NCBI GenBank assembly: GCA_002269645.1
Contig: NIVC01000363.1
Coordinates: 186,001-250,000, forward strand
Length of the DNA stretch: 64,000 nt
From: Macrostomum lignano
Lineage: Eukaryota
Reading direction: 5' to 3'
Below are positions 2,549-64,000 of the stretch, in pieces. Position 1 is the stretch's first letter, and the number at the start of each line of letters is the position of its first letter. The position numbers and the translations under genes are program-made. Below the pieces are notes generated by a model. The model was not told the DNA's origin, made no database searches, and saw only the letters and a program-made list of their open reading frames with translations.

Positions 2549-33247
<30,699 letters not shown>

Positions 33248-35534: not shown

Positions 35535-36945
35535 ACGAGTCAACCACTGAATAATCTTAAGTTGACCCACTAAAGAATCCAGAGTTGAACCATCATGAAT
35601 AATCCAGAGTTGACTCACCATGAAGAATCCAGAGTTGACTCACTAAAGAATCCACAGTTGACCCATTGAAGAATCCACAGTTGACCCACTGAAGAATCCA
35701 CAGTTGACCCATTGAAGAATCTTAAGTTGACCCACGGAAGAATTCAGAGTTGACTCACCATGAATAATCCAGAGTTGACTCACCATGAAGAATCCAGAGT
35801 TGACTCACTAAAGAATCAAGAGTTGACTCACCATGAAGAATCCAGAGTTGACCCACTGCAGAATCCAGAGTTGACCCACTGAAGAATCCAGAGTTGACCC
35901 AATGCAGAATCCAGAGTTGACCCACTGTAGAATCCAGAGTTGACCCACTGTAGAATCCAGAGTTGACCCACTGTAGAATCCAGAGTTGACCCACTGCAGA
36001 ATCCAGAGTTGACCCACTGAAGAATCCAGAGTTGACCCACTGGAAGAATCCAGAGTTGACCCACTGAAGAATCCAGAGTTGACTCACTGAAGAATCCAGA
36101 GTTGACCCACTGAAGAATCCAGAGTTGACCCACTGGAAGAATCCAGAGTTGACCCACTGGAAGAATCCAGAGTTGACTCACTGAAGAATCCAGAGTTGAC
36201 CCACTGAAGAATCCAGAGTTGACCCACTAAAGAATCCTTAAGTTGACCCACTGAAGAATCCAGAGTTGATCCACTGCAGAATGCAGAGTTGACCCACTGA
36301 AGAATCCAGAGTTGACCCACTGCAGAATCCAGAGTTGACCCACTGAAGAATCCAGAGTTGACCCACTGCAGAATCCAGAGTTGACCCACTGCAGAATCCA
36401 GAGTTGACCCACTGAAGAATCCAGAGTTGACTCACTGAAGAATCCAGAGTTGACCCACTGAAGAATCCAGAGTTGACCCACTGGAAGAATCCAGAGTTGA
36501 CCCACTGGAAGAATCCAGAGTTGACTCACTGAAGAATCCAGAGTTGACCCACTGAAGAATCCAGAGTTGACCCACTAAGAATCCAAGTTGACCCACTGAA
36601 GAATCCAGAGTTGATCCACTGCAGAATGCAGAGTTGACCCACTGAAGAATCCAGAGTTGACCCACTGCAGAATCCAGAGTTGACCCACTGAAGAATCCAG
36701 AGTTGACCCACTGCAGAATCCAGAGTTGACCCACTGCAGAATCCAGAGTTGACCCACTGAAGAATCCAGAGTTGACTCACCATGAAGAATCCAGAGTTGA
36801 CCCACTGAAGAATCCAGAGTTGACCCACTGGAAGAATCCAGAGTTGACCCACTGGAAGAATCCAGAGTTGACCCACTGGAAGAATCCAGAGTTGACCCAC
36901 TGGAAGAATCCAGAGTTGACCCACTGAAGAATCCTTAAGTTGATC
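35535..36945. repeat. 23-bp minisatellite (GAGTTGACCCACTGAAGAATCCA)n just downstream of the RING gene
   Basis: Periodicity is visible directly. It accounts for the ORFs at 35755-37022. Confidence 0.95.
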
Positions 36946-37107: not shown

Positions 37108-37641
37108 TCATAGGTACAGCAGCGTGAATCCTGTGGTGCCGGTTCTACAGCAGAAGCACACTGACCGAGTCCTGTACCAGGCCAGCAGGCAAGGCAAGCA
37201 GGCGACGTGGCCGCAGTTGGCCGCAGCGGAGGGCCCGACCTTCGACAGGCTGGTGAGGCAGATGCGACAGGCTGGTGCGGCAGCGTCTGTGTCGGATGGA
37301 GTCTGCTGTTGACTCCGCTGCAGCTGCTGCTGATTGATGCAGCAGCAGTCGGAGATGCCCGAGTCCGAACTGACAGGCCGGCTGCCATCAGCATCATCGT
37401 CATCATTAACATCGGTCTCGACTGTCCTTAGTCTTCGTCGGTAGAGCTGCTGCAGCTGGGCGTACAGCTGTCGGGGATGCTGCTGAGGCGGCGGCGGAGA
37501 TGCCAACGATGGAGCTGGAATCCAACGGTGCTGCTGATGCTGGTTGCTGGCCGTGGCCGCCGCATCCGCAGGCGCTGGCAGCACCAGCTGCAGTCGGAAT
37601 GGCGGATTACGTATCGAAGTGATCGATCTTGGCTGCTCCAT
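37108..37641 (-). CDS. Single-exon C3HC4 RING-finger protein (putative E3 ligase), about 177 aa from MEQPRS
   Basis: C-terminal CRICLTSLSKVGPSAAANCGHVACLPCLLAWYRTRSVCFCCR fits RING-HC spacing. The N-terminus is low-complexity (Gln/Pro/Asp). The start codon is uncertain because the open frame extends to 37731. Confidence 0.78.
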   Translation of the reverse strand: MEQPRSITSIRNPPFRLQLVLPAPADAAATASNQHQQHRWIPAPSLASPPPPQQHPRQLYAQLQQLYRRRLRTVETDVNDDDDADGSRPVSSDSGISDCCCINQQQLQRSQQQTPSDTDAAAPACRICLTSLSKVGPSAAANCGHVACLPCLLAWYRTRSVCFCCRTGTTGFTLLYL

Positions 37642-38439
37642 GCCGATCAGATTATAGAAATTTAAGCAACGAAGAGAGTACGAGTAACTTTGCAGTCTCT
37701 GGCTTGCTAAATTGGCCACTCGTGCTAACACAGCTCAGTACTCGTCTCAGTTTTGAGTATTATTAGGCACAAGGTGAAGAGTAGGAGGGCTTTGAAGTGG
37801 GCCGTGACTCACAACCCCCCCCCCCCCTGTTCATATAGGCGTACACCGTCGCGCGTTGGTGCAGTTAAACTGCCACCCAGCCCCAGAAATAGACTCACGC
37901 AGCCACAGAATAGCTTCAACTGTACATTGCATGGCACACGCTATTTAGGTTAGGCTCAGAATCGAGCTGTTGAGCATGGGGCAGTATAGGGGGCATTATA
38001 ATCAGAAAATATAGAAACATTCAGCTAGAACTATGAAGTATCTTTGCATCAACCAGTTATACTTCAGCAACTTTAATTAACATACATGTATAGTTTAGTT
38101 AAGCAATGTCATTGATGTCTCAGGAAACCTGTGAAGGAGTCCCGAGCAAGCAGAAATCCTGTCACATGCTGTAGCACCAAAGGGGGCATAGCCAAGATGT
38201 TTCATCGGACTTGAGGGGATTAGCTAGTTGTTGTTGAGCATATTAGACTGTATTCATGCAGATCTGGCACAAAGACAGCTATAGAAGCTTAATTACAACT
38301 GAAAAACTCACAATTCTTTATTTTCCAGACGTTTATAAGAGCTAAAACTTGCAACTTGCAGCCTAAACTACAGATTGACCCTGTCGATAGTTTTTATATC
38401 CTTAAAAACTACTTCACATAATAATAATAATTTATTATT

Positions 38440-38725
38440 ATTTACTCCTGCCCTAATGGCCAGATGTGCAACCGACAGCTCAGCCGCAGCTATTGCGCGG
38501 TGCATCTGAAGGCTGCGTACGGCTGTTCAGTCCAAGGACTGGGGGTCGCCACACACCCTCAATTACCCCAGCTAATGCTGGCACTCATTTTACATCTGGG
38601 TGAACTGAAGCAATGCAGAGTTAACAGTCTTGCTCAAGGACACAAATTGTTCCAGTGGGATCGGGAATCGAACTCCCGACCTTCAAGTCGTGAGTCCGAC
38701 GCTCTGACCAGTAGGCTACAACCCG
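38440..38725 (-). mobile_element. CORE-type tRNA-derived SINE (family A)
   Basis: Near-identical to 61564-61849, with a TAA/ATT-rich tail at the left end. Confidence 0.85.
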
Positions 38726-40066
38726 GTAGTAGTTCACACACCCATCAATTGAGCAAGGTAGTTGATAAAATTATGTAACGTTTAAGACTGATGTTTTTGA
38801 AAAGTATACTGGGCCGTGAGTGCAGTTCGAGCAGAAGCTTTTAGAAGTCAAAGTGACTCACTTTCGGGTCCATTGTCTGTATCCTGCACCTGTTTATTTT
38901 TACTTTACGCGCATTAGCTGGGGCTTCCACATTCTGAGAGCTAAAAGCAATCCACTGTGTCTCTGCCGTGATTTTAAACGTCAATCATGCAGACTGACAA
39001 GCGTGAACAATGGAAGCTTTTTGCAGTGAAACGGAGCTCTTTGATGGTCAGCTTTTAAAAGACTTTCCTATCGAAAAAAATTGGCCACGCATTTCAGTTT
39101 AGGTTAAATCGACAAGAATATTTGCACATTTCATACGCAAGCATTCTCTTTACCTAGGACCACTGGAATGTTATCAGTAGTCCAAGAGCCGAGGGGCCAA
39201 TGACTAGATGTAAGTTGTGAACGGGTTATGAGACGCTCTATTATCCTTGGTCCTTATAGTCTAGTAGTCCTTGTCTCCTTTACAAAGTGCATGATGGCAG
39301 TCTCGAATTGGGGGAACGTCCCTGAGAAAATTCTCTGGGATTAAGCTTGCGTCTCTGAAAATCCTGAATTAGCCTTTTCTTGAAGATATGCAGTTTAGTA
39401 ATTACTAAGGAAAGGAAAACAGCGCCATATACTTCTGGATCGAATATGCGGCCATCTCGACTCTTGCAGGAGCATATGGACAGTGTTCACTGGTAACTTG
39501 AATTTTTCAATTATCAAGTTGGCACTCAAAGGTAGCAAAATGTTGTACAAGTAACTATAGTGTGCTTTTACAGATTTTATTGTCTTTAAATGACGAAATC
39601 CCATTCAGCGTTATGCCTTCTCTAGAGCATACAAAAGGCACAAGCGATGCGATAAATATGATGTTCATTACCGGCAGCGCCTTCCATCTCAGCTGAGAAA
39701 GGCCAGTAATGCCGCCATTCTCATTCAAGCTGGTACTGAAATTTCAAAAAGATTCTTGAACACTCTTGCTTGTATGCAAAATAATGAAAACGGTTGGCTA
39801 TGATCATTATGGTTTTACCGACGTATTTTGCTTTTAAAATATATTTTGAAAAAAGACCTTCTCATAAGACTAGTTGTAGTCTGTCTGTGTAGGCTTCACA
39901 TAGGGCTTCCTTCAAAACGTATTACAACAAGAGAAACCGACAGAGTCTACAGAGCTAAAGAGTAAAGCGTGTTAGAGAGTCACAAGTCTCGGTTTGCAGT
40001 ATTTCTCAAAGGACAATATGAGAAGATAAACTTATTGCCGCCACAGAAAATCTGTTTCTGTTTCAT

Positions 40067-41014
40067 TCACGGAGAACACATGCTGAGAATCTGAGCCACT
40101 TCCAGTTCGCTGATGGCCCGATCGAGAACAGCAAAGCAGTTCATGTGGCCTTGAAACACGCGATTGTGCCCGGTCGATCTGGATATGGCTCCGATCTGCA
40201 CTGAGCTGCCAAAGTGCACACAAGCAGATGATGTCTGAGTCCTGCTGTCTGATTGCTTCAACGAACCATTAACGTACATTCTGATTAGCATCCGGTTGGA
40301 AAAAGTCGCCGAGTCGTAAACTACTGCGAAGTGAGTCCAGCTGACTGATGTGCTCGTCAGGCCAGAAACGGTCTTAGCGAATTCAGCTGTTCCAATCACA
40401 AACTGCAGATTGGTTGTGTCGGGATACAGCCACAGGCGAGTGAAGTACTGATCGGGCATGGAGAGGCCTTCGAGAAGCGGCATCGGACCCCTTGTCGAGT
40501 TGGTGACCTTGACCCACACTGACATGGTGAAGCTGGTGAGACACACCGAAGTCAGCTCGTCAATGTTGAACCGCTCTGACACATCCGACTGACCAGTGAA
40601 GTTGACGGCATTGTCCGTGTACTGCAGCGGGATGTTCTCCTGCAGGTCGAGATGGCCGCTGTTCGGGACCGCATTGCGAGTCCGAGTGGCGTTGCTCATG
40701 GGCCAGAAGGCGACGAAGCCGAGCTCTCTCAAACGACTCCACATCTTGCAGCTAGCATTGTTCGTCCAGACCGTATGGACACTGTCCGACACGTTGCACC
40801 TGCCGTGTCGGTAGCTCCATCCGATGCAGGAGCTCCGACTTGAGCAGAGAGAGGCACAGAAACAGGCGCTGGACGCCTTGAGCTGTTGGCTTGCTTCGAC
40901 CATGAGACAGCCACCGTTGGTTACAGAGAACTTCTGCTGCTTACTGGCGATTGCAACAGAAGTGCTCGCTACGAGAAGGAGAAGCAAACGCATCACTACA
41001 CTCGAGAGATTCAC
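40067..41014 (-). CDS. Secreted PAN/apple-like + LamG/pentraxin-like (ConA-fold) protein, copy A, intact, 315 aa
   Basis: Hydrophobic signal peptide, Cys-rich module (C..CASLCS.RSSCIGWSY..GRC), then LamG-like motifs (vAFWPM, FTMSVWVK, WTHFAVVYD, MYVNG, VQIGA, FQGHMNCFAVLDRAIS). No introns. Confidence 0.8.
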   Translation of the reverse strand: MNLSSVVMRLLLLLVASTSVAIASKQQKFSVTNGGCLMVEASQQLKASSACFCASLCSSRSSCIGWSYRHGRCNVSDSVHTVWTNNASCKMWSRLRELGFVAFWPMSNATRTRNAVPNSGHLDLQENIPLQYTDNAVNFTGQSDVSERFNIDELTSVCLTSFTMSVWVKVTNSTRGPMPLLEGLSMPDQYFTRLWLYPDTTNLQFVIGTAEFAKTVSGLTSTSVSWTHFAVVYDSATFSNRMLIRMYVNGSLKQSDSRTQTSSACVHFGSSVQIGAISRSTGHNRVFQGHMNCFAVLDRAISELEVAQILSMCSP

Positions 41015-42535
41015 TGCAGTCTAGACTTCTCTTAAATTCTTCAGATAACTGTTGATTTGCGGACGAAGTGTTCGTGGATGCCGTCTGTGGCCAGCTACTG
41101 AATGCTTTGAATATTCGTGGCAACGGATCTGCTTCGACTGCGCGTCGAATGTCGCGCTATAGGCTGCGGGTAGCTCAAACAAGATTTTTTCTTAAAGGGA
41201 AACTACGCAAGCGAGGTCGCCAATGAGACAGCGCGCACATGTTAACACTGTTGTCCCATCGCAGGCCTTGCCTGCCTCGTTTCATCCAATGCATCAACTT
41301 TTTGTTTGTCTTGCTTCAGGAAGCTGCGTTTGCCAAAGATAATTTCCGCATTATGTTAAGTTTCATAGACAAGCCAAATGGGGTGTCAAATATTCATATT
41401 TGGTCTTATAAATGGAAGCGGAATATCAAAACGGCCGTCTCACTGTTGGCTCTCACTACTGAGCCTTTGTTTGCAGGCGGCAAACATGACAGAAGCACTC
41501 GCTAGAACAGGTACGAGCGGAACCAAGAAAGCTCTGCTCCGATCAAACCTGGCTCCAATGGACATCGCAAAGTTCTGATGACTGTATCCTGGATCTTATA
41601 GAGTATCGTAACTGAAATGGTAATCTGGGTTAGGATTCGTAAAACAGACGAGGAAACAGACGTCAGACCTTGAATTCGATCTACACTCACTGCCGACACA
41701 AAAGTGGAATCCGAAAACGACTTTTCCATTTTCGGAAGTTCCCACCAAGACATCGAAGCATTAGCCTGCAGTTCCTGCATTTATTTGTTTGTTCGAAATA
41801 AAGTTTGACTCTTTCCAAAACCCAGCAACCGCTCATAGCAGATGAAGCTACCGCAGGTAAACTACAGTTGTGAGTACCCGTGCGCATCTGGCAAACAGTA
41901 TTTGAAGCAAACAAAAACAAAATTTTAAGTAATTAACCTTTGAAATCCGAATACTTCAGCTCTAAAATAATTCTTGCAGTATCCACGAAATGAACAGGTC
42001 TGGACTCCGGCTCAGATAGGGGCATTGGAAGCTGCATTTAAATCCACTTGCTAAGACAATGAAAATTACTTGCAAATACTCCCCAATTAGATTGTTCGCG
42101 CTAAAAAACTGAGGACTGCTGAAGTATGAGCGAACTATGTTGCTTGAACCGTCCTTGGTTTTCGAGTAAAACTCCCCAACTTGATTGGCATCCAAGAACA
42201 AGGCAAAAAAGCTCTTATTGAAACAGTTGAGGATTTCAATCATTCGGAAAGCCAGTTTCAGCAACAGGTGTAAGAAATTACAGCGCACAGTATCATGGGA
42301 AAATATAAAGCAAAGTATTCTCGATACTTCCTTTTGAAGGACGGATTCCGCTTCGAAAAGGCTTGCATTTGGAATCTCAAATACGTGAATGAGTTCGATT
42401 GGCCTCATAAAGAAATTTGAAGAAGCTGCCAGTTAAACCCAGAGGCTCGAATTTTGCTATAAATTCCCGATGTTCAATGCCACACCCAGGAAACTCGCTG
42501 AAGCTGATCAGATTAATTCTTGAAGCATCAATAAA

Positions 42536-43462
42536 ATGATTCATTTCATTATACTGGGGATTCTATTCCTCTCAAGTAAAACAATAGACTGCAGCGAGCT
42601 GCACGGACACATCTCGGTCGGCGGCTGCGTGGTGCCGCAGACTCCGCAGCACTCGCTGGCGGCCTCGAGCGCCCGCATGTGCGCCTTTCTGTGCTCTCAG
42701 CTCCGTCGTCCCTGCATCGCCTGGAGCCACCGCGCAGGCGTCTGCAACATGTCGGACAGCCTCCAGACCGCCAGTCTGACGAACGACACCGACTGCCAGG
42801 CGTGGAGCGCCCTGCGCCAGCTCGGCCTCGTCGCCTTCTGGCCCATGAGCAACGCCACTCGGACTCGCAATGCGGTCTCGAACAGCGGCCATCTCGACCT
42901 GCAGGAGAACATCCCGATGCAGTACACGGACAGCGCCATCAACTTCACTGGTCAGTCGGGTGTGTCAGAGAGGTTCAACATTGACGAGCTGACTTCGGTG
43001 TGTCTCAGAAACTTCACCATCTCCATGTGGATAAAAGTCAACGACCCGGATTGCCGTCCAATGCCCCTGTTCGAAGGTCTGGTCCTGCCCGTCGAGTATC
43101 TCACTCGCATCTGGCTGTACCCGGATTGCTCCACAATGGAATTTACCGTGTTTTCACCTGAGACGCACACCAAATCGGGTCAACCAATCAACCATACAGG
43201 CGATTGGACTCATATCGCTAGCGTGTATGACATGACGATTCCAGCCACCACGCTGTACATCAATGGCACGCCAGTCAACACAACAACTTCGGTGGCTTCA
43301 ACCGTGAATTCGTGCGTCAACTTTGGTTCGACCGTGCTAATTGGAGCCATCGTCCGCTCGACTCCGCACAACCGCGTGTTCCTGGGCCAAATGCGCTGCT
43401 TTGGTGTGTCGGCAAGAGCGCTTGGAGTCGACGAGGTCACTCAGATGATGCGGATTTGTTAG
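42536..43462 (+). CDS. Secreted PAN/apple-like + LamG/pentraxin-like protein, copy B, intact, 308 aa
   Basis: Same architecture as copy A. Signal peptide starts MIHFIILGILFLSS; motifs include WTHIASVYD, LYING and FLGQMRCF. Confidence 0.8.
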   Translation: MIHFIILGILFLSSKTIDCSELHGHISVGGCVVPQTPQHSLAASSARMCAFLCSQLRRPCIAWSHRAGVCNMSDSLQTASLTNDTDCQAWSALRQLGLVAFWPMSNATRTRNAVSNSGHLDLQENIPMQYTDSAINFTGQSGVSERFNIDELTSVCLRNFTISMWIKVNDPDCRPMPLFEGLVLPVEYLTRIWLYPDCSTMEFTVFSPETHTKSGQPINHTGDWTHIASVYDMTIPATTLYINGTPVNTTTSVASTVNSCVNFGSTVLIGAIVRSTPHNRVFLGQMRCFGVSARALGVDEVTQMMRIC

Positions 43463-43714
43463 TAGTGCTGCTTAAGCCACTGCGAGCCAGCTGTTGAACT
43501 GTAGCTCGCTTTTGTTCAAAGAGCCGACGCAACGCATATTGCTGTCGTATTTTTGTTTAAAATCTATGGTCAAAACATTTATATCTGATAATTACGAGTA
43601 CACATATCAATGAGTAGTATCAAAGTCTCTGTATGAAAACGTTAGTGCAATTGGAAGAACTTTAACGCGTTACTAATTCGAACTATTAAACGAATAATAA
43701 TTAACACTAATTGA

Positions 43715-44001
43715 CTACACCTGCCTTAATGTGCACGTGCACAACCGACAGCTCAGCCGCAGCTATTGCGCGGCGCATCGAAGGCTGCGTACGGCTGTTC
43801 AGTCCAATGACCTGGAAGGTCGCCCCACACAGCCTCCAATTACCCCAGCTAATGCTGGCACCCATTTTACAGCTGGGTGAACTGAAGCAATTCAGAGTTA
43901 AGTGTCTTGCTCATGGACCAATTGTTCTGAGTGGGTCGAGAATCGAACCCCCGACCTTTTAGTCACGAGTCCGACGCTATAACCACAAGGCTACAACCCC
44001 C
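43715..44001 (-). mobile_element. CORE-type tRNA-derived SINE (family A)
   Basis: Same body as the other family A copies. The minus-strand head is GGGGTTGTAGCCTTGTGGTTATAGCGTCGGACTCGTGAC...GGTTCGATTC. Confidence 0.82.
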
Positions 44002-44386
44002 TGGTCAGTCAGTTGTCCAGCCGTTATCGTTCAAGTTGCATTGAATCTACCAAGTTCTTGGAATCACTTTATTTAGTGTTAGAGTGAGAAAATAAGTAAA
44101 AGCTGTTTTTTCGTGTATTCAGCTGGTCGTGGGGCGAACTCAAAGGTGACAACATCACTGTATCGGGAGGTAACAAAAAATATTACTTTAAATACGTGTA
44201 TACAGTGCTCAAAAAGTTTTTTAAACAGGGCTCAAACAGCAAGAATGTTGCTTTTCTTCTAAAAACACGTAAAAATGTTTCATTGTGAATAAAAATTTAC
44301 TATCACTAATGCTGGCATAACAATAACGAAAATCAGTCTATTCCGCAATAGTAATTGCTTAAAATACGTTAACTCTAGATTTTTTC

Positions 44387-45295
44387 TTAGCACAGTCTCT
44401 GCAGCAGAGCAACTTCCGAGTCCCTCAGAGCTCTCTCTGAAACTCCGAAGCATCTCATGAAGCCCTCGAAGACGCGGTTGTGACCGGCATTGCGGCTGAC
44501 GGCTCCGATCTGCACGCTGCTGCCGAAGTTCGCGCACGAGGTCAAAGCGGCGGCCGATCCGCTGGTGGCCTGTCGAGTTCCGTTGACGAGGATCCTGATT
44601 TCCGGTGTCTGCTTGTCGTACACCGCGCGATGTGGGTCCAACCGCTGGCCGTGTCGGTGGGTCCAGACACTGAGACCTTCGATACAACGGTGAACTCGAT
44701 GTTGGTAGCTGTAGGATAAAGCCAAAATCGAGTGTGGTATGAAGAAGGCATTGTGAGGCCCTCCAGCAGAGGCATCGAACCCCTTGACGCATTGGTGACC
44801 TTGACCCACACTGACATGGTGAGGCTGGTGAGACACACCGAAGTCAGCTCGTCAATGTTGAACCGCTCTGGCACATCCGACTGACCAGTGAAGTTGACGG
44901 CGCTGTCCGTGTACTGCATCGGGATGTTCTCCTGCAGGTCGAGATGGCCGCTGTTCGGGACCGCATTGCGAGTCCGAGTGGCGTTGCTCATGGGCCAGAA
45001 GGCGACGAAGCCGAGCTCTCTCAAACGACTCCACATCTTGCAGCTAGCATTGTTCGTCCAGACCGTATGGACACTGTCCGACACGTTGCACCTGCCGTGT
45101 CGGTAGCTCCATCCGATGCAGGAGCTCCGACTTGAGCAGAGAGAGGCACAGAAACAAAGCGCTGGATGCCTTGAGCTGTTGGCTTTCTTCGACCATGAGA
45201 CAGCCACCGTTGGTTACAGAGAACTTCTGCTGCTTATTGGCTAGTGCAGTCAAAGAAAAAAAAGTAGTAAATACACCAGGAGCGGCAGTTTTATT
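44387..45295 (-). pseudogene. PAN/LamG-like copy C, with frameshifts at about 45157 (+1) and 44628 (-1) and no clear ATG
   Basis: Three overlapping ORFs (45044-45253, 44542-45207, 44387-44836) stitch into a full-length paralog. The lesions could be sequencing errors rather than real. Confidence 0.7.
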
Positions 45296-45621
45296 GCGCT
45301 GCAGTAATATTTTTTATTATTCTGACAATATTTGGATCTCTTCTCTTTAGGCAAGCATACGAGGGTATTTAAATAATCTTCATGTCTGAAAAATTGATCT
45401 GAAACTCGATTGTCACTTGAATTGAATTATCTCATGCATCATCATTGGCTTCACAATTTTGGTAGCAAATAGCAGAAGTTTGAGATGTCTAGTAGAGTCA
45501 TGGCAACCTCCTGCTCAACTTTCGAGCACACGCCCCAAACGAATGACAACGGGTGACAACAAAGACAAGGGAACATAGAGGGAGGGTATACTTTCGTGTA
45601 GTTTCTAGGAACTGTTAGGGC

Positions 45622-46085
45622 TGTCTGCTGAGGGGCTGCTGAGGGGGTCTGCTGAAGGGGTCTGCTGAGGGGGTCTGCTGAGGGGGTCTGCTGAGGGGGT
45701 CTGCTGAGGGGGTCTGCTGAGGGGTCTGCTGAGGGGGTCTGCTGAGGGGGTCTGCTGAGGGGTCTGCTGAGGGGGTCTGCTGAGGGGGTCTGCTGAGGGG
45801 TCTGCTGAGGGGTCTGCTGAGGGGGTCTGCTGAGGGGGTCTGCTGAGGGGTCTGCTGAGGGGGTCTGCTGAGGGGGTCTGCTGAGGGGGTCTGCTGAATG
45901 GGGTCTGCTGAGGGTGTCTGCTGAGGGGGTCTGCTGAGGGGGTCTGCTGAATGGGGTCTGCTGAGGGGGTCTGCTGAGGGGGTCTGCTAAGGGAGTCTGC
46001 TGAGGTGGTCTGCTGAGGGTGTTTGCTGAGGGGGTCTGCTGAGGGGGTCTGTTGAGGGGGTCTGCTGAGGGGCTCTGCTGAGGGT
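45622..46085. repeat. 12-13-bp minisatellite (TCTGCTGAGGGGG)n
   Basis: Periodicity is visible directly, with a variable G-run. Confidence 0.93.
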
Positions 46086-46873
46086 TCGGACCCTCGTGGT
46101 AGGACTGATTCTGCACTCGGGTTGAGGTGGGAACTTCAGGCGGATCTAAACGGGTTTTGAACGTCTCTTAACTACAAACAACTCTTTTAGCTACAAAATA
46201 ATTGCCGAATCCTAAGTGCTGCCTTTGCCTTTGTCATTCAGCAATATGAATGACTAATTGCTTTCATGCCTGGGAACCAAATATTCACAAATTGACACTT
46301 AGGAAACAATAGCTGTTTCTCAAAATCTGCTTGACTGACTGTTTGAACTGATTTTTTTTAGTTGTCTGTCAATCTAGAAAATTTATGTTTTTCCTAGACC
46401 CAATGTCAAACACGGAGAAACTTTGTATTTACAAACACTTGACATGCCTACACTCAACAATATTCAGTTGGGTTGTCAGCAAATGCGTTGGTGGGAATAC
46501 TTTGGAAGCATTACAGATGGACTTTTTCGAGTGTCAATCCTGTAAATTAATTTCATACGATTTAAGCGGCTGTTTTTATGCAAAAGGGAAATCCTCGAAA
46601 ACACGCCGCAATAGCAGGATTGGAATCCTACGATTTATACTTCGATCTAGCTGTGCCTAATAGGAGGTCACAGTATTCACTGTAGATGATATAGTCCATA
46701 GTCACCTGGCGCCATCTGTTGAAGGTACCGACGGTCAAGCCTACGGCCGGCCAACCTTGTTCAAGCCTACTTCTGTACTTCAGTTACTTTGTGTCTAGCG
46801 TGAATCTCAACATTGAAATAATTTGGGAGTTTTTTTCGAATACTCTAAAAAGTAGTTCCTCCTTGAGTTGCGT

Positions 46874-47420
<547 letters not shown>

Positions 47421-48241
47421 GATGTCGTCGTTGTTACTGTTTTCGTTGTTGTTGCTGTCAATCTGCTTGGCCAGACCTGCTAGTGCGCACCTCCGTACCG
47501 CAGCCGATCTTCAAAGCAAGGCAGCCAGTTCGATGCAGGCATTGCATTTACCAAAGTTACGCGTGATGAAATTCGATGCTGACAAAGTGCACCTCTAATG
47601 TTTTATGGCTGTGCTGAAAATGTATCTACATGATGCGAAATACGCCGTCAACCAAGTGAAGCGGAGATCGATCTTGAAACTCAACCAGACGAAGCTGTTC
47701 CCCCGAAAAACCGAAGGTATTTTTTATACAACTGCCACTCCAAAATAATTTCTTCTTTTTTAATCAAGCAATCTCTCAGTGGTTCTTTCTTATTCCCATC
47801 ACTTCCACAGTTTGCTTCTGTTCTCTGACTAATAGTAGCAATATGCAAGATATTTTGGAAAAAAGTAAATCTGATGAATTACAATCAATTTTACACAGGC
47901 ATCTAGAATGCAGGCCTGAACAACTTTCCAGTACAAGCACCGACATGCAATAAAGTTCCAGCGAAATTAATAACGTTAAAGAAAAATTCACTACGATTAA
48001 ATAGAAAAGCTTCCTATCTGCTTGAAACGGTGAAAAAGGTCAAGGTCACTTAAACCAGCGGTAAAAACTAAACAAAAATGGAACTTGAAGGTGATTGGCT
48101 GCAGAGATGCAATTTTGGCAAAGTAGATAGAGCGACGACAAATTTTCAGTACCTTGCAAAAGTCTTATACAGCAAAGCGCCGAGAAACGAGACAGAATTT
48201 TTCGCCAATCTTTCATTCATTGTCTAAGTCAGCACTAGGAA

Positions 48242-49164
48242 ATGTGCAGCAACTGCTCTCCTTTTCTGTTTCTTCTTTTCTTTCTGCCCGCCATTGCCCA
48301 AGCCGGCAGCGAGCTGCACAGCAGCATCTCTCTCGGCGGCTGCGTGGTGCCGCAGACTCCGCAGCACTCCCTGACGGCCTCGAGCGCCCGCATGTGCGCC
48401 TTCCTGTGCTCGCAGCTCCGTCGTCCCTGCATCGCCTGGAGCCACCGCGCAGGCGTCTGCAAACATGTCGGACAGCCTCCAGACGCCAGTCTGACGAACG
48501 GCACCGACTGCCAGTCGTGGAGCGCCCTGCGCCAGCTCGGCCTCGTCGCCTTCTGGCCCATGAGCAACGCCACTCGGACTCGCAATGCGGTCCGAACAGC
48601 GGCCATCTCGACCTGCAGGAGAACATCCCGATGCAGTACACGGACAGCGCCGTCAACTTCACTGGTCAGTCGGGTGTGTCAGAGAGGTTCAACATTGACC
48701 AGCTGACTTCGGTGTGTCTCACCAGCCTCACCTTATCAGTGAGGGTCAAGGTCACCAATGCGTCAAGGGGTTCGATGCCTCTGCTGGAGGGCCTCACAAT
48801 GCCTTCTTCATACCACACTCGATTTTGGCTTTATCCTACAACTACCGACATCGAGCTCACCGTTGCATCGAAGGTCCGAGTGTCCGGACCCACCGACACG
48901 GCCAGCGGTTGGACCCACATTGCCGCTGTGTACGACAAGCAGACACCGGAAATCAGGATCCTCGTCAACGGAACTCGACAGGCCACTAGCGGCTCGGCCA
49001 CCGCTTTGACCTCGTGCGCGGACTTCGGCAGCAACGTGCAGATCGGAGCTGTCAGCCGCAGTGTCAGCCACAACCGCGTCTTAGAGGGCTTCATGAGATG
49101 CTTCGGAGTGTCAGAGAGAGCTCTGAGCGACTCTGAAGTTGCTCTGCTGCAGGGGCTGTGCTGA
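48242..49164 (+). pseudogene. PAN/LamG-like copy D, with indels at about 48461 (+1), 48484 (-1) and 48592 (-1)
   Basis: ORF 48242-48706 gives the signal peptide and N-module; ORF 48154-49164 gives the C-module. Indels were located by comparison with copies B and E and may be sequencing errors. Confidence 0.72.
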
Positions 49165-49389
49165 AATTAAGCTGGAGCTGTCAACGATTAGAACAGGAAG
49201 CGTTCATCTGGACCTGTTTGAGAAATTGTGGTTTTGTACTGCCTCTTATAGTGTTTACTCCTTAATTCAGTGAGTATCATGGGGAATAAAAGAGATCATA
49301 TTTCGATATCATTATATTCATTTTGTAAAAAAAAATTTTCCTAATGTTCAGCTTTATATAGAACATACAATATTCTACTTCACCTTGAA

Positions 49390-50060
<671 letters not shown>

Positions 50061-52053
50061 ACTAAATTTTAACGATGTTTTTAGCCTCTTGAGCTTGTCA
50101 AATCCATTTCGTATCAGTTATAATTGCCTTTTCTGGGTAAAAAACATACATACACTATAACCTTTTGCATACGAGCATTATTTTTTTTCAAATCGGAACA
50201 TTCTTATCCCTGCGATTGTTCAATTGTGAGTATCTATGTTCTATGCGAGAAAGTTTGTCGTTAAATTTCAAGAATATACTCATTATTCTAGCCCTACGCG
50301 GATGTCAACAGGCCGATTTAATGGAAAGTTTGGTCTTTATGTGAAGCATACCTTTGTTTCACTTTCTAATTGAGTAACTAAGAAAAGTTAAGTGCATAAC
50401 ATCCTGCTTCTTATAGAACTTCAGTTTGCAAGAGGCACAGGAAAGTACGTGCTAGAGTCTGTTGCTTGGTGAGTACACGGACACACGAACACGAGGAAGC
50501 ATATTGGAAAAGAGCACTTTGAAGGAAAGCTCTGAAGGAAGGGTTTATAAAGACTTTAAGAGAAAATCAGTAAAACTAGCTTCAATCTATAACTTTGCCT
50601 CAATTTAAGATGCGACGCGCGACTAAAATCATCAGTCAGGAGGCTGAAAAGACATAATTGACCATGGAGAAAAGCCCATGGAATAGAAAGAATTCAGTGG
50701 TTGCAATAGAAATTTTTAGGTGTAGAATAAGACTGTATAGAAAAGTACACAGCAAATCGCCAAACCGGCAATCCTAGACACAGAGCCAGTTTCATAGGGC
50801 TTCATTCCGCTTCTGAATAGGTAGAACCTGAGACATTGTTAAATTGGCTTTGCCAAAGAGAATAACAGCTTAGAATTCCTAAACACGAGAGCGCGTTGTA
50901 GCTCGTAGTCAAGGCGCCTCTACTCGCCTTTGTTTGAACTGCCTGGAAACGCAATCCAACAAAAAGCTTCCAACTTAATTGGCAATGCAGGCGCAGCGGT
51001 ATGGATGGAGAGGTTCTCATCTTGAATTATTGATTCCCAGGTGCAACGCGTGGGCTGCTATTTTGGCTTATTAGGGACAGCCAGTGAATTCCCGTAAGCA
51101 TTTTTTGAAGAATTCCAATTAAAAAGGCACAGCTATAGTCCCACAACTTTGTTAAGAGTTTAGGCAAGTGAATGAATGGCATTTCTATGCAATTAGAAAG
51201 TCAGCTAGCATTTTTGTGTGTTTGAAATCGCTATATAGCTAAGAGACAATTTAAGTAGAAAGTAGAAAATTACGATTATGCCTTACATGCTATACTCAAA
51301 ACAAATATGATCACACGAAACCAAACTGATTGTTAATTTGATGCTATCTTGGATTTTTGTATCATAAGCGTGAGTCATGACACGTCGCAACCATCAATTT
51401 TGGCACCCTGAAGTTTGATTCCTGATACCATGGGCACCAGCTGGTTTTCCAAGCTGAATACCATTCAGTTCAAGCTTTAAGTTTCATTTAAAGCATCAAT
51501 CATTCTATAATTACGAGTATCGGGATTCTTGCGACTTAAAGACTTCTAACAATCGTCAGATTTAAGCAGTCTGTAAACATGGAGTCTGCAAACTTCTGCA
51601 ACATAACGATACAAATTCGACCTAACTGCAATACAATAAAAGACTGCACTATATTTTTCATAAAAATAGTTTTTTAAAAGCTGATATCATCGAAAAGCAG
51701 CGCTTTACCTACTGAAAACATTCATTTTTCAAACTTGTCAGTCTGCGGATTGACGTTCAAAAATTGCGACAGACACAATGGATTACTTTTAGCTGTCTGG
51801 ATGTGAAAAAACGCAGCATGCAAAGAAAAAATGAACGGATGCTGGATATGCTGTAGTCGAAGACAATGGATCCAGAAGTGAGTCACTTACTCCTAGACCC
51901 AGCAGCCATTCTGTCATTTACCGAAATAGCTAGTCAAACCGCTCAACTAAAGTCAATGCAAGCAGAAATCGATTTTTCTGTTTAAAAGCAGCTGCATCAG
52001 AAAGAAAGCTTCAAAAACATATCTGAGTTTTCTGATTGCAAGACAGCTGGAAA

Positions 52054-52986
52054 ATGCATTGCAAATCGAACATTTTCGCGCTTTGTGCTCTGTCGCTGGC
52101 ACAGCTGGCGCTCTCGGCCCAGTACGAAACCTCGACAGGCGGCTGCGTGGTGCCGCAGACTCCGCAGCACTCGCTGGTGGCCTCGAGCGCCCGCATGTGC
52201 GCCTTCCTGTGCTCTCAGAAGCTCCGTCGTCCCTGCATCGCCTGGAGCCGGCGCGCAGGCGTCTGCAACATGTCGGACAGCCTCCAGACCGCCAGTCTGA
52301 CGAACGACACCGACTGCCAGGCGTGGAGCGCCCTGCGCCAGCTCGGCCTCGTCGCCTTCTGGCCCATGAGCAACGCCACTCGGACTCGCAATGCGGTCTC
52401 GAACAGCGGCCATCTCGACCTGCAGGAGAACATCCCGATGCAGTACACGGACAGCGCCGTCAACTTCACTGGTCAGTCGGGTGTGTCAGAGCGGTTCAAC
52501 ATTGACGAGCTGACTTCGGTGTGTCTCACCAGCCTTACAATGTCCGTGTGGGTCAAGGTCACTAACCCAGCGAGAGGTGCGATGCCTCTGCTGGAGGGCC
52601 TCACAATGCCTTTTTCATACCACACTCGATTGTGGCTTTATCCTACAACTACCAACATCAAGTTCACCGTTGTATCGAAGGTCTCAGTGTCTGGACCCAC
52701 CGACACGGCCAGCGGTTGGACCCATATCGCCGCGGTGTACGACAGGCAGACTCCGGAAGTCAGGATCCTCGTCAACGGAACTCGACAGGCCACCAGCGGC
52801 TCGGCCACCAGCGGCTCGGCCACCGCTTTGACCTCGTGCGCGAACTTCGGCAGCAGAGTGCAGATCGGAGCCATCAGCCGCAGTTCCGGTCACAACCGCG
52901 TCTTCGAGGGCTTCATGAGATGCTTCGGAGTGTCAGAGAGAGCTCTGAGCGACTCTGAAGTTGCTCTGCTGCAGGGACTGTGCTGA
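52054..52986 (+). CDS. Secreted PAN/apple-like + LamG/pentraxin-like protein, copy E, intact, about 310 aa
   Basis: ATG at 52054, signal peptide MHCKSNIFALCALSLAQLALSA, same architecture as the other copies, and a 15-bp tandem duplication giving SGSATSGSAT. Confidence 0.82.
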   Translation: MHCKSNIFALCALSLAQLALSAQYETSTGGCVVPQTPQHSLVASSARMCAFLCSQKLRRPCIAWSRRAGVCNMSDSLQTASLTNDTDCQAWSALRQLGLVAFWPMSNATRTRNAVSNSGHLDLQENIPMQYTDSAVNFTGQSGVSERFNIDELTSVCLTSLTMSVWVKVTNPARGAMPLLEGLTMPFSYHTRLWLYPTTTNIKFTVVSKVSVSGPTDTASGWTHIAAVYDRQTPEVRILVNGTRQATSGSATSGSATALTSCANFGSRVQIGAISRSSGHNRVFEGFMRCFGVSERALSDSEVALLQGLC

Positions 52987-54209
52987 GAGCAGTTTTAGGA
53001 ATCGAAGCAAAAGTTCTAATGAAACTATTTCACTTTAATCAATCGTCTTTTCTGTAATCTTGAAAGTTACGAGTATTTATGGTAGTTGTCTGCAGGTCGT
53101 CGGCTCTTATCTATATTAATATTTTCTATATTACATATACAATTAACTGTTCATGTAATTTTAAACTTACTAATCTAAAATTTGTTCAGAGACACTTTAA
53201 AACTGTCGGTCTATTTTTTGTTCCGAACTATAAGACATGTACCTGGGTGTTGTGTTAACATAACGTTATTGGTTAATCATACTTTTTACTATACTCTCTC
53301 ACTATTTACTTTACCAGCTGCATTTACGAAGCGGCCCAATTGACAATATTGAGCAAATATATCCTGCAAACGTCAATATGACCTACGAGTATTAACATCG
53401 AAAAAGATGGTATACGAACCAAAAATGTTGTTAGCTTTGAGATTGCACAGGTTACCGCCTGTCTGATAAAAATGAAAGAATCTGAAAATTATGGCATTTT
53501 AATAGAGTTCGGAACCTTTGGCACTACAAGAGGGATTTACATTTTACGAGCGTAGGCAGGTGTACAGTACGTTTAAAATCTCGCGAAATCAAAAGCTCAT
53601 CCATTACTCAAATTTTGAGTTGCCTCGTGGATCCCCCCTGTCGCATATGTAATTCTTCCTTCACTATTTCAGTGTACACAGCACTTGAGCTCACGAAGAT
53701 TTAATAAATAGCTATTTCCTGGCAAAATTTGTACAATTTCCAGTTCTCACACTGGTGCGGAAACCAGTACTTCATAGTTTTTGCTTGCTATCTAAAATAG
53801 TCGAATTGGGCGAGTGAAGAAAGGCAAAGGCGGCACGCCACCACCAGTTGACGCTAAATAGGGGAGAGTCCTAATTTCTCAATGTACATTTTAGCCTACA
53901 ATGTACAGTGTGGGGCGTGGGGTGGCTGTCTTATTCACTGCGCGTCACTTCTCAGTAGGGGTGCTGGACTGCTGGGGGGCTTCTTTATCAGTTCTTGGTC
54001 AGTTGATTCCACGCGCTTCGCATAGGCCTTAAAACTTTTAAAACTCAACCAGACAGCAGAGATCAAGATCGTCCTGACGTCTTACTTAACGCATTCCTGC
54101 CACACTGACTATAGAATATAACAAAACAATAAGTGTCGCCGGCAAGCCGTCCATCACAAATAGGATTTTGGTGTTTTAATGGTACTTGTTCAGGGCATTG
54201 TCTACAACC

Positions 54210-64000
<9,791 letters not shown>

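What the first reader, a model, noticed from the sequence alone, without database searches (positions are those of the whole stretch)
40067..52986. Five secreted PAN+LamG-like genes show module shuffling around an invariant core
Two N-modules (N1, QQKFSVTNGGCLMVE..., in A and C; N2, GGCVVPQTPQHSL..., in B, D and E) combine with three C-modules (Cy in A; Cz in B; Cx, ...YHTR.WLYPT...SGPTDTASGWTHI..., in C, D and E). The combinations are A=N1Cy, B=N2Cz, C=N1Cx and D/E=N2Cx. All switch points flank a ~180-bp block (VAFWPMSNATRTRNAV.NSGHLDLQENIP.QYTD.A.NFTGQS.V.ERFNID.LTSVCL) that is almost nucleotide-identical in all five. N1 copies are on the minus strand and N2 copies on the plus strand. This looks like combinatorial diversification by gene conversion or ectopic recombination through a shared core, as expected for a recognition-protein family (immunity, mucus or adhesion, or reproduction; function is inference).
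Basis: partly seen in the sequence, partly recalled or inferred. Interest (0 to 1): 0.75.

Follow-up and report, generated by a model that had tools for sequence, protein, structure and literature searches.

The report
Mosaic lectin-like gene cluster in flatworm
Five neighbouring copies of a flatworm-specific secreted lectin-like gene are real patchworks, built from anciently diverged front and back halves joined at a 190-base stretch kept almost identical by sequence copying between the genes; this is a known kind of gene-family evolution in a family nobody has studied, and its function is unknown.

Summary
The window is Macrostomum lignano DNA. It carries five intronless paralogues: A 40067-40993(-), B 42536-43462(+), C 44387-45253(-), D 48242-49164(+), E 52054-52986(+). 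Each has a signal peptide, a Cys-rich N-module, and a LamG_3 jelly-roll domain.

- **N-modules:** two types, A/C and B/D/E, with saturated synonymous divergence (dS 1.8-2.6) between types and 0.03-0.07 within.
- **C-bodies:** three types, CDE, A and B, with dS of 1.5 or more between types and 0.05-0.11 within.
- **Core:** the 189-bp core has dS 0-0.05 in all ten pairs.
- **Trees:** they conflict at 100% bootstrap, AC|BDE in the N-module against AB|CDE in the C-body.
- **Flanks:** homology stops at the signal-peptide boundary and at the stop codon.

This points to non-reciprocal exchange (interlocus gene conversion) among old tandem paralogues, centred on the core.

- The core is the first ~60 residues of the LamG domain, so the C-side switches lie inside a domain.
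- A finer 'bridge' segment has its own types.
- C and D carry 1-bp frameshifts here, possibly assembly errors.
- C has lost its signal peptide.
- The PAN assignment is sub-threshold.

Adaptive 'combinatorial recognition' is untested. Partial concerted evolution fits equally well. I rate this a new member of a known kind, of moderate interest.

The parts
40067..40993 (-). Copy A (N1-core-b1-Cy), intact 308-aa ORF. It has a hydrophobic leader, MRLLLLLVASTSVAIAS. Segments: N 40726-40918, core 40537-40725, bridge 40479-40536, C-body 40076-40478.
   Evidence: (Laminin_G_3 E=1e-17)
42536..43462 (+). Copy B (N2-core-b3-Cz), intact 308-aa ORF with a leader peptide. Segments: N 42617-42818, core 42819-43007, bridge 43008-43065, C-body 43066-43459.
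   Evidence: (Laminin_G_3 E=7e-13)
44387..45253 (-). Copy C (N1-core-b1-Cx). It has two 1-bp frameshifts, an insertion near 45159 and a deletion near 44628. Its leader is decayed and has no ATG. The frame-corrected reading has no internal stop. Segments: core 44829-45017, C-body 44390-44770.
   Evidence: Another M. lignano gene model (P0002) reads it in frame.
48242..49164 (+). Copy D (N2-core-b1-Cx). It has a good leader peptide. Three 1-bp homopolymer indels lie near 48460, 48484 and 48592. The frame-corrected reading is open. Segments: core 48534-48721, C-body 48780-49161.
52054..52986 (+). Copy E (N2-core-b2-Cx), intact 310-aa ORF from the first ATG, with a leader peptide. Segments: N 52135-52339, core 52340-52528, bridge 52529-52586 (own ancient type), C-body 52587-52983.
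   Evidence: (Laminin_G_3 E=4e-14)
42819..43007 (+). The near-invariant 189-bp core, given here in copy B's coordinates. It encodes LG(L/F)VAFWPMSNATRTRNAV.NSGHLDLQENIP.QYTD.A.NFTGQS.V.ERFNID.LTSVCL, which is the first ~60 residues of the LamG_3-type jelly roll.
   Evidence: Bacterial LamG_3 homologues align from query residue ~101-105 onward.
45623..47419 (.). A minisatellite (13-mer, 45623-46084) and a trinucleotide microsatellite (46875-47419). They fill much of the C-D intergenic spacer and are context only.

Best explanation
This is an old tandem cluster of a Macrostomum-restricted family of small, intronless genes for secreted glycoproteins. Each protein has a leader peptide, a six-cysteine PAN/apple-like module, and a LamG_3 (concanavalin-A-like lectin) domain.

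The paralogues are ancient. Their flanks share no similarity, and synonymous sites are saturated between module types. Parts of the mature coding sequence have nevertheless been overwritten recently and repeatedly by non-reciprocal copying between copies, that is, interlocus gene conversion.

- Tracts covering the N-module plus core link A with C, and link B, D and E.
- Tracts covering the core plus C-body link C, D and E.
- All tracts overlap in the first ~190 bp of the LamG domain. That stretch is therefore homogenised across all five copies.
- Because it is the only stretch identical in every pair, it is also the place where further exchange can start. This is a self-reinforcing hot spot.

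The result is mosaic genes: A = N1-b1-Cy, B = N2-b3-Cz, C = N1-b1-Cx, D = N2-b1-Cx, E = N2-b2-Cx.

**Shown:** the mosaic structure, the incongruent segment histories, the synonymous-site homogenisation, and the lack of flank co-transfer.

**Inferred:** conversion as the mechanism, the core as nucleation site, a lectin-like extracellular binding function, and any adaptive value of the new combinations.
For: - **Species and locus.** The closest protein is M. lignano 'LamGL domain-containing protein' A0A1I8I643. A chimeric M. lignano gene model, P0002, maps onto this window exon by exon at 98-100% identity.
- **Domains.** Laminin_G_3 scores above Pfam's cut-off in A, B and E. The PTX3 pentraxin domain is the best solved-structure relative, at E=1e-5. 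PAN_1 and PAN_4 are the only Pfam hits for both N1 and N2.
- **Mosaic.** Supported by sliding identity and by breakpoints reached in 0 of 200 permutations.
- **Synonymous divergence.**
  - N-module: 1.8-2.6 between types, 0.03-0.07 within.
  - Core: 0-0.05 in all pairs, with dN/dS about 1.
  - C-body: 1.5 or more between types, 0.05-0.11 within.
- **Trees.** Neighbour-joining bootstrap gives 100% for AC|BDE in the N-module and 100% for AB|CDE in the C-body.
- **Finer patch.** In the 18-codon bridge, E differs from C and D at 8 of ~14 synonymous sites. In the rest of Cx the figure is 5 of ~95 (Fisher P = 8e-6).
- **Flanks.** No flank homology lies beyond ~40 nt upstream of the mature N-terminus or beyond the stop codon.
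- **Composition.** GC3 is highest in two of the shared segments (N2 0.91, core 0.82) and lowest in the unique ones (Cy 0.60, Cz 0.64). N1, shared by A and C, is only 0.68 and Cx 0.70. The trend hints at GC-biased conversion but rests on few segments.
- **Related copies.** The related M. lignano model P0003, with E's leader, is itself a patchwork of D-, A-, E- and C-type variants. P0001 joins a B-identical N2 to a fourth C type.
Against: - Conversion normally needs homology on both sides of a tract. The outer ends of the exchanged modules now abut sequence with no detectable similarity. How a saturated module was first replaced is therefore not explained; template switching or cassette-like events cannot be excluded.
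- Only five copies from one assembly were analysed at the DNA level.
- C and D are frame-disrupted here, so part of the 'repertoire' may be pseudogenes.
- No long reads, no other individuals and no outgroup species could be examined.
- Structure prediction failed (pLDDT 34), so the position of the switches in the fold rests on sequence alignment only.
Confidence: 0.8

Rival explanations
1. This is ordinary partial concerted evolution with no diversifying role. Gene conversion is erasing older diversity in a tandem family, leaving one core type, two N types and three C types in five genes. The mosaics are neutral by-products, and some copies (C, perhaps D) are decaying pseudogenes that are passively overwritten.
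For: - D and E are about 92% identical over the entire mature CDS, so they are redundant.
- The core has dN/dS about 1.
- C lacks a leader peptide and has frameshifts, and D has frameshifts.
- Only 4 of 6 combinations are seen.
Against: - Ancient module types persist with dN/dS about 0.2 between types, so distinct types have been kept by selection for a long time.
- Frame-corrected C and D have no internal stops.
- C reads in frame in another annotation.
Confidence: 0.4
2. This is an assembly artefact. The mosaics are chimeric joins made by the assembler across the near-identical ~190-bp core, or a mix of the three homeologous subgenomes of this neopolyploid.
For: - M. lignano is a neopolyploid with extended paralogous regions, and its assemblies are fragmented (PMC10733133).
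- The 1-bp homopolymer indels in C and D suggest an imperfectly polished long-read consensus.
Against: - The published assemblies rest on deep PacBio data, whose reads are far longer than 190 bp.
- Kilobase minisatellite arrays are resolved in the window.
- The P0002 model has the same gene order and the same N1-Cx mosaic for C.
- Breakpoints are staggered and include a 45-bp internal patch, which is not what a join at a repeat would give.
- The core retains three AC|BDE sites.
Confidence: 0.05
3. Reciprocal unequal crossing-over within the core, between tandem copies, created the chimeric genes as classical domain shuffling. Each chimera would carry the 5' flank of one parent and the 3' flank of the other.
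For: The core is the only stretch with enough identity for homologous recombination between any pair. The copies are in tandem within 13 kb.
Against: - Copies that share a module do not share the adjoining flank. Signal peptides, 5' flanks and 3' flanks are all unrelated.
- Several partner copies are in inverted orientation, where a crossover would invert rather than create a chimera.
- Short internal patches (the E bridge, P0003) need conversion-type events.
Confidence: 0.08
4. The core is held identical by a nucleotide-level function, such as an RNA structure, a small-RNA target or an antisense transcript, rather than by exchange.
For: Synonymous sites are frozen in the core. Long antisense ORFs run through it.
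Against: - The core RNA folds no better than shuffled controls (z = +1.3).
- No Rfam family matches there.
- The antisense ORFs are the expected by-product of GC3-rich codons.
- Of the ten variable core sites, one is a 1-bp gap in D. Seven of the other nine change the protein, so there is no strong constraint.
- This idea does not explain within-type near-identity or the conflicting trees.
Confidence: 0.03

Closest known systems
Sp185/333 (SpTransformer) immune gene clusters of sea urchins (Miller et al. 2010, PMC3091723)
   Same: Both have small genes packed a few kb apart in both orientations. Both have members that are mosaics of shared sequence blocks. In both, gene conversion or recombination among neighbours is invoked, and simple repeats lie between genes.
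   Different: - There is no evidence of sequence relatedness between the two families; here the domains are a PAN-like module plus LamG_3.
- Sp185/333 genes share conserved 5' and 3' flanks bounded by microsatellites. Here flanks are completely unrelated and homology is confined to the mature CDS.
- Immune induction is shown there and is unknown here.
- That family has more than 40 members. Here five are seen, plus a few related gene models elsewhere in the species.
SmPoMuc polymorphic mucins of the flatworm Schistosoma mansoni (Roger et al. 2008, PMC2576457)
   Same: Both are flatworm multigene families of secreted glycoproteins in which recombination between members generates variants around conserved portions.
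   Different: The protein type differs: mucin tandem repeats with a conserved C-terminus. Variation there also arises from repeat number and splicing. Its role in parasite-host compatibility is documented. Here the animal is free-living and the function is unknown.
Interlocus gene conversion in classical tandem families (globins, MHC, KIR, plant NLR clusters) - established knowledge, cited from memory
   Same: All show patchwork paralogues, segment trees that disagree, conversion limited to coding sequence while flanks diverge, and GC enrichment of converted segments.
   Different: The contrast here is unusually sharp. dS is about 2 on both sides of a 189-bp block with dS of about 0.05 or less. 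One class of switch point lies inside a single globular domain, not at an exon or domain border.
LamG_3 / pentraxin-type concanavalin-A-like lectin domains (Pfam PF13385; PTX3 structures 8pvq, 7zl1)
   Same: The C-terminal ~210 residues match LamG_3 above threshold. They are distantly similar to the PTX3 pentraxin domain.
   Different: - Pfam's Pentaxin model gave no hit.
- The nearest relatives outside Macrostomum are large bacterial multidomain proteins at 25-32% identity.
- Within the sensitivity of a full-length phmmer search with E, no hit outside the three Macrostomum proteins began upstream of query residue ~87, so none covered the N-module.

Membership tests
Laminin_G_3 (PF13385) concanavalin-A-like lectin/glucanase superfamily | Match to the family HMM above Pfam's gathering score | tested here: met
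   A scores 65.1 bits, B 49.4 and E 53.4, against a cut-off of 27.6. In addition, 338 LamG-type relatives were found at E<=1e-3, aligning from residue ~101 to ~312.
Pentraxin family | Match to the Pentaxin HMM or the pentraxin signature | tested here: not met
   No Pentaxin hit appeared among Pfam results at E<=1. There is only a distant profile match to the PTX3 C-terminal domain, E=1.2e-5. This is resemblance of fold class, not membership.
PAN/apple domain (PF00024, PF14295) | HMM match above the gathering score | tested here: not met
   PAN_1 scores 13.6 bits for N1 and 14.7 for N2, against a cut-off of 21.4. PAN_4 scores 11.5-12.8 against 27. They are the only hits for both diverged modules, so the assignment is plausible but unproven.
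PAN/apple domain (PF00024, PF14295) | Apple fold with three nested disulfides | tested here: inconclusive
   Six cysteines are conserved in both N1 and N2. The AlphaFold model was unusable (mean pLDDT 34), and no PDB sequence hit was found for the N-module.
Secreted protein | N-terminal signal peptide | tested here: inconclusive
   Read by eye, hydrophobic leaders follow the first ATG in A, B, D and E. C's leader is decayed. No signal-peptide predictor was available.
Paralogues shaped by interlocus gene conversion | Different segments of the same genes give significantly different trees | tested here: met
   The N-module gives AC|BDE at 100% bootstrap and the C-body gives AB|CDE at 100%. Maximum chi-square breakpoints were reached in 0 of 200 permutations.
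Paralogues shaped by interlocus gene conversion | Homogenisation includes synonymous sites, so it is not merely protein-level constraint | tested here: met
   Core dS is 0-0.05, against 1.5-2.6 in the adjoining modules between types. P is about 2e-16.
Paralogues shaped by interlocus gene conversion | Non-reciprocal exchange: flanking DNA is not exchanged with the tract | tested here: met
   There is no flank similarity between copies that share modules.
Paralogues shaped by interlocus gene conversion | The mosaics are present in the real genome, on single molecules | not testable with these tools
   No read data are available. Indirect support comes from the UniProt model P0002, which shows the same order and the same mosaic C.
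Sp185/333-like diversifying immune gene cluster | Conserved gene flanks bounded by microsatellites | tested here: not met
   The flanks are unrelated. Simple repeats lie only in the C-D spacer. The comparison feature is taken from PMC3091723.
Sp185/333-like diversifying immune gene cluster | Induced by immune challenge; many variants per individual or population | not testable with these tools
   No expression or population data were reachable. Exact-protein look-ups in public assemblies found nothing.

The most novel reading that the evidence does not exclude
The ~190-bp core may be a selected recombination joint. It would be kept identical so that a free-living flatworm can recombine ancient PAN-like heads and lectin-domain bodies, even splitting a single jelly-roll domain. 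That would yield a germline, population-level or possibly somatic repertoire of secreted recognition proteins. It would be a platyhelminth counterpart of Sp185/333 or FREP-type diversification, with C acting as a leaderless donor cassette.
Probability: 0.1. Interest if true: 0.8.

Novelty: new member of a known kind. Interest (0 to 1): 0.48.

Why it matters
- **A tractable example.** If the mosaics are real on single molecules, this locus is a compact and unusually clean case of interlocus gene conversion. It produces chimeric proteins whose junction lies inside a folded lectin domain. It occurs in a laboratory model flatworm that has transgenesis and RNAi.
- **A family to investigate.** It marks an unstudied, Macrostomum-restricted family of secreted lectin-like proteins. 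These are candidates for immunity, mucus or adhesion, or reproductive interactions.
- **A practical warning.** The public gene models at this locus (P0002, P0003) are chimeras. They string antisense ORFs and neighbouring genes together, so automated annotation of this family is unreliable.

Tried and rejected
- **Structure prediction.** Mean pLDDT was 34, so it was unusable and no fold search was run.
- **N-module against PDB.** A profile search of the N-module gave 0 hits at E<=10.
- **Homologue searches.** Two word-index searches returned only one M. lignano protein.
- **Exact-protein look-ups.** Look-ups for A, B, E and P0001 in public assemblies found nothing on record. No extra DNA loci or transcripts were obtained.
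- **Literature.** Searches for Macrostomum with LamG, pentraxin, PAN, lectin or gene conversion found no description of this family.
- **RNA element in the core.** Rejected: z = +1.3 on folding and no Rfam hit.
- **Shared 3'-flank repeat of A and B/C.** The repeat at 38423-38724 and 43693-43999 was tested as a possible relic of duplication. It is a dispersed tRNA-derived SINE-like element with four copies in the window, so it is uninformative.
- **Hudson-Kaplan Rm.** The value of 14 was discarded as a count of events, because saturated segments create homoplasy.
- **Weak Pfam hits.** Hits to Sialidase N-terminal and to a neurotoxin receptor-binding jelly roll (E 0.002-0.26, below cut-off) reflect only the shared lectin-type fold. 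They were not pursued.

Full report
**What is there.**
The region holds five and only five related coding stretches (tblastn and blastn of the window against itself).

| Copy | Coordinates | Strand |
|---|---|---|
| A | 40067-40993 | - |
| B | 42536-43462 | + |
| C | ~44387-45253 | - |
| D | 48242-49164 | + |
| E | 52054-52986 | + |

- A, B and E are uninterrupted single-exon ORFs of 308-310 aa from their first ATG.
- C carries a 1-bp insertion and a 1-bp deletion. D carries one insertion and two deletions.
- All five of these indels are length changes at short homopolymers.
- Once they are neutralised, both copies read through without internal stops.
- C also lacks a leader. The stretch corresponding to A's signal peptide is recognisable but has ATG changed to GTG and a 10-bp deletion.

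**Organism and independent support.**
- The closest database protein is Macrostomum lignano 'LamGL domain-containing protein' A0A1I8I643 (P0001).
- A search of 1.84 billion representative proteins found only three close relatives: P0001, P0002 and P0003. After them come distant LamG-type proteins with E of about 1e-15 or weaker. Those I looked up are bacterial.
- P0002 is a 1519-aa chimeric gene model. Its exons map onto this window at 98-100% identity, in the order: 59.7 kb, then antisense E, antisense D, copy C, antisense B, copy A, and down to 31 kb.
- So the window is this M. lignano locus. A second annotation shows the same gene order and the same N1-Cx mosaic for C.
- That annotation reads C in frame across both positions that are shifted here. 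The frameshifts may therefore be consensus errors.
- The published M. lignano assemblies rest on deep PacBio data from a neopolyploid with three homeologous subgenomes (PMC10733133).

**Protein anatomy.**
- Pfam places Laminin_G_3 (PF13385) over roughly the last 150 residues, well above threshold.
- Bacterial LamG_3 homologues align from residue ~101-105 to the C-terminus. The structural domain therefore begins at '...LG|LVAFWPM', which is exactly where the 'core' begins.
- The best solved-structure relative is the PTX3 pentraxin domain, at E=1e-5. No Pentaxin Pfam hit was found.
- The ~70-residue N-module has six conserved cysteines.
- For both diverged versions of the N-module, the only Pfam hits are PAN_1 and PAN_4, and both are below threshold at E 0.03-0.3.
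- PAN is therefore plausible but not established. Structure prediction failed for lack of alignment depth (pLDDT 34).

**The mosaic.**
A MAFFT alignment of the five copies with 300-bp flanks and sliding identity show four kinds of segment.

1. **N-module.** A and C are 97-100% identical. B, D and E are 95-100% identical. The two groups are 40-72% identical to each other.
2. **Core.** The 189-bp core is at least 96.6% identical in every pair.
3. **Bridge.** This 58-bp segment has three types of its own: (A, C, D), E and B.
4. **C-body.** C, D and E are 93-95% identical, while A and B are each unique at 55-59%.

| Segment | dS between types | dS within type |
|---|---|---|
| N-module | 1.8-2.6 | 0.03-0.07 |
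| Core (all ten pairs) | 0-0.05 | 0-0.05 |
| C-body | 1.5 to unmeasurable | 0.05-0.11 |

These are Nei-Gojobori estimates on a protein-guided codon alignment.

- At most 2 synonymous differences in ~43 core sites has P about 2e-16 at the flank rate.
- In the bridge, E differs from C and D at 8 of ~14 synonymous sites. In the rest of Cx the figure is 5 of ~95 (P = 8e-6). This reveals a short, anciently diverged patch inside an otherwise Cx gene.
- Maximum chi-square breakpoints were reached by 0 of 200 permutations in every pair.
- The clearest breakpoints are:
  - C against D and E at the 5' edge of the core (C 45017);
  - B against D and E at its 3' edge (B 43008);
  - A against C about 60 bp further 3' (A 40478).
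- Neighbour-joining bootstraps give AC|BDE at 100% in the N-module and AB|CDE at 100% in the C-body.
- Ten core sites vary. One is a 1-bp gap in D, and seven of the other nine change the amino acid. Three sites still carry the AC|BDE split, up to column 834. The CDE split starts at column 887.

**Flanks.**
- Self-comparison of 37-56 kb finds no similarity between copies outside the mature coding sequence.
- Local alignment of 400-bp flanks against shuffled controls detects only two things: the 40 nt before the mature N-terminus for A-C (z=22), and about 30 nt for B-D (z=4.8). Nothing is detected after the stop codons.
- Leader peptides are all different.
- The one repeat shared by the 3' sides of A and of B/C is a dispersed tRNA-derived SINE-like element with four copies in the window.

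**Inference.**
- Unrelated flanks and saturated dS between module types mean the paralogues are old.
- dS of 0.1 or less within types, over sharply bounded segments with conflicting trees, means recent transfer of sequence between them.
- Because flanks do not move with modules, and partners are often in inverted orientation, non-reciprocal conversion fits better than unequal crossing-over.
- The core lies in every inferred tract, and it is the most similar segment of all. It is more similar between types than N2 is within its own type.
- I therefore read the core as both the product of exchange and its preferred starting place.
- GC3 is highest in N2 (0.91) and the core (0.82) and lowest in the unique Cy (0.60) and Cz (0.64). 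N1 (0.68) and Cx (0.70), which are also shared, sit close to the unique segments. Intergenic GC is 0.40-0.43. The trend hints at GC-biased conversion, but the sample is small.
- Exchange appears to be continuing.
  - P0003 is a related copy of E from elsewhere in the species. Its downstream MatE exons map to 54.2-62.4 kb at 65-100% identity, most at 90% or more.
  - P0003 combines E's leader and bridge with D-type N-module variants, an A-type core variant, and C-type variants near the 3' end.
  - P0001 joins a B-identical N2 to a fourth C type.
- One step is unexplained: how a saturated module was first replaced, given that there is no homology beyond its outer end.

**What is not shown.**
- Nothing here tests function or adaptive value.
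- The data fit 'combinatorial diversification' and 'partial concerted evolution' about equally.
  - For long-term selection: ancient types are maintained, with dN/dS about 0.2 between types.
  - For homogenisation: D and E are redundant, only 4 of 6 combinations exist, and two copies may be damaged.
- An RNA-level explanation for the core is unsupported (z = +1.3; no Rfam hit).
- An assembly artefact is unlikely, but it cannot be excluded without reads.

**Comparison with known systems.**
- The nearest analogues in behaviour are the sea-urchin Sp185/333 clusters (PMC3091723) and the schistosome SmPoMuc family (PMC2576457).
- This locus shares their tight clustering and block mosaicism. It differs in protein type, in having unrelated flanks, and in lacking any functional data.
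- I found no paper describing this family.
- I rate it a new member of a known kind: a mosaic tandem family shaped by interlocus conversion. Two unusual details stand out: the extreme contrast around a 189-bp block, and a junction inside a single lectin domain.

Noticed in passing
window 38423-38724, 43693-43999, 61544-61847, 8927-9135: This is a dispersed ~300-bp repeat, 84-92% identical between copies, that ends in a tRNA-like sequence. It is probably a tRNA-derived SINE. The only Rfam hit in the window (tRNA, 61779-61848, minus strand) lies inside one copy, and ARAGORN called no tRNA.
   Followed up: partly
window 1-64000 (e.g. 6532-7885, 10162-11354, 35544-36934, 45623-46084, 46875-47419, 54542-55419, 56032-56929, 59839-60987, 62485-63812): Tandem repeats are exceptionally dense: more than 20 mini- or microsatellite arrays of 0.3-1.4 kb. 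Several are strongly strand-skewed in G/C. Two of them fill the C-D spacer.
   Followed up: no
window 31000-59700, minus strand (UniProt-derived model P0002): The public 1519-aa gene model is a chimera. It splices antisense ORFs of E, D and B together with real copies C and A, and with a RING-finger exon (37165-37587) and PLAT domains. The GC3-rich CDSs lack antisense stop codons and mislead gene predictors.
   Followed up: partly
window ~2500-33200, minus strand: There are many PLAT/LH2-domain-encoding segments, with tblastn hits at about 3.3-4.1, 5.7-6.2, 8.3-8.8, 16.3-17.7, 18.9-19.1, 22.1-22.3, 26.3-26.7 and 31.0-32.8 kb. This suggests one or more large multi-PLAT genes.
   Followed up: no
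window 54186-62382, plus strand: Exons of a MatE-family transporter lie downstream of E. The related model P0003 fuses an E-like gene to this transporter, which is another annotation chimera. P0003 probably comes from a homeologous or allelic locus.
   Followed up: partly
copies A-E (LamG part): The nearest relatives outside Macrostomum among 1.84 billion representatives are bacterial LamG_3 proteins (Lentisphaerota, Gracilibacteria, Armatimonadota, Verrucomicrobiales) at 25-32% identity. The genes are intronless. Ancient horizontal origin versus database bias was not resolved.
   Followed up: no
window 51651-51888 vs 38851-39081: An inverted 72%-identical repeat pair of ~235 bp has one copy ~170 bp upstream of E and the other downstream of A. 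It is probably another dispersed element.
   Followed up: no
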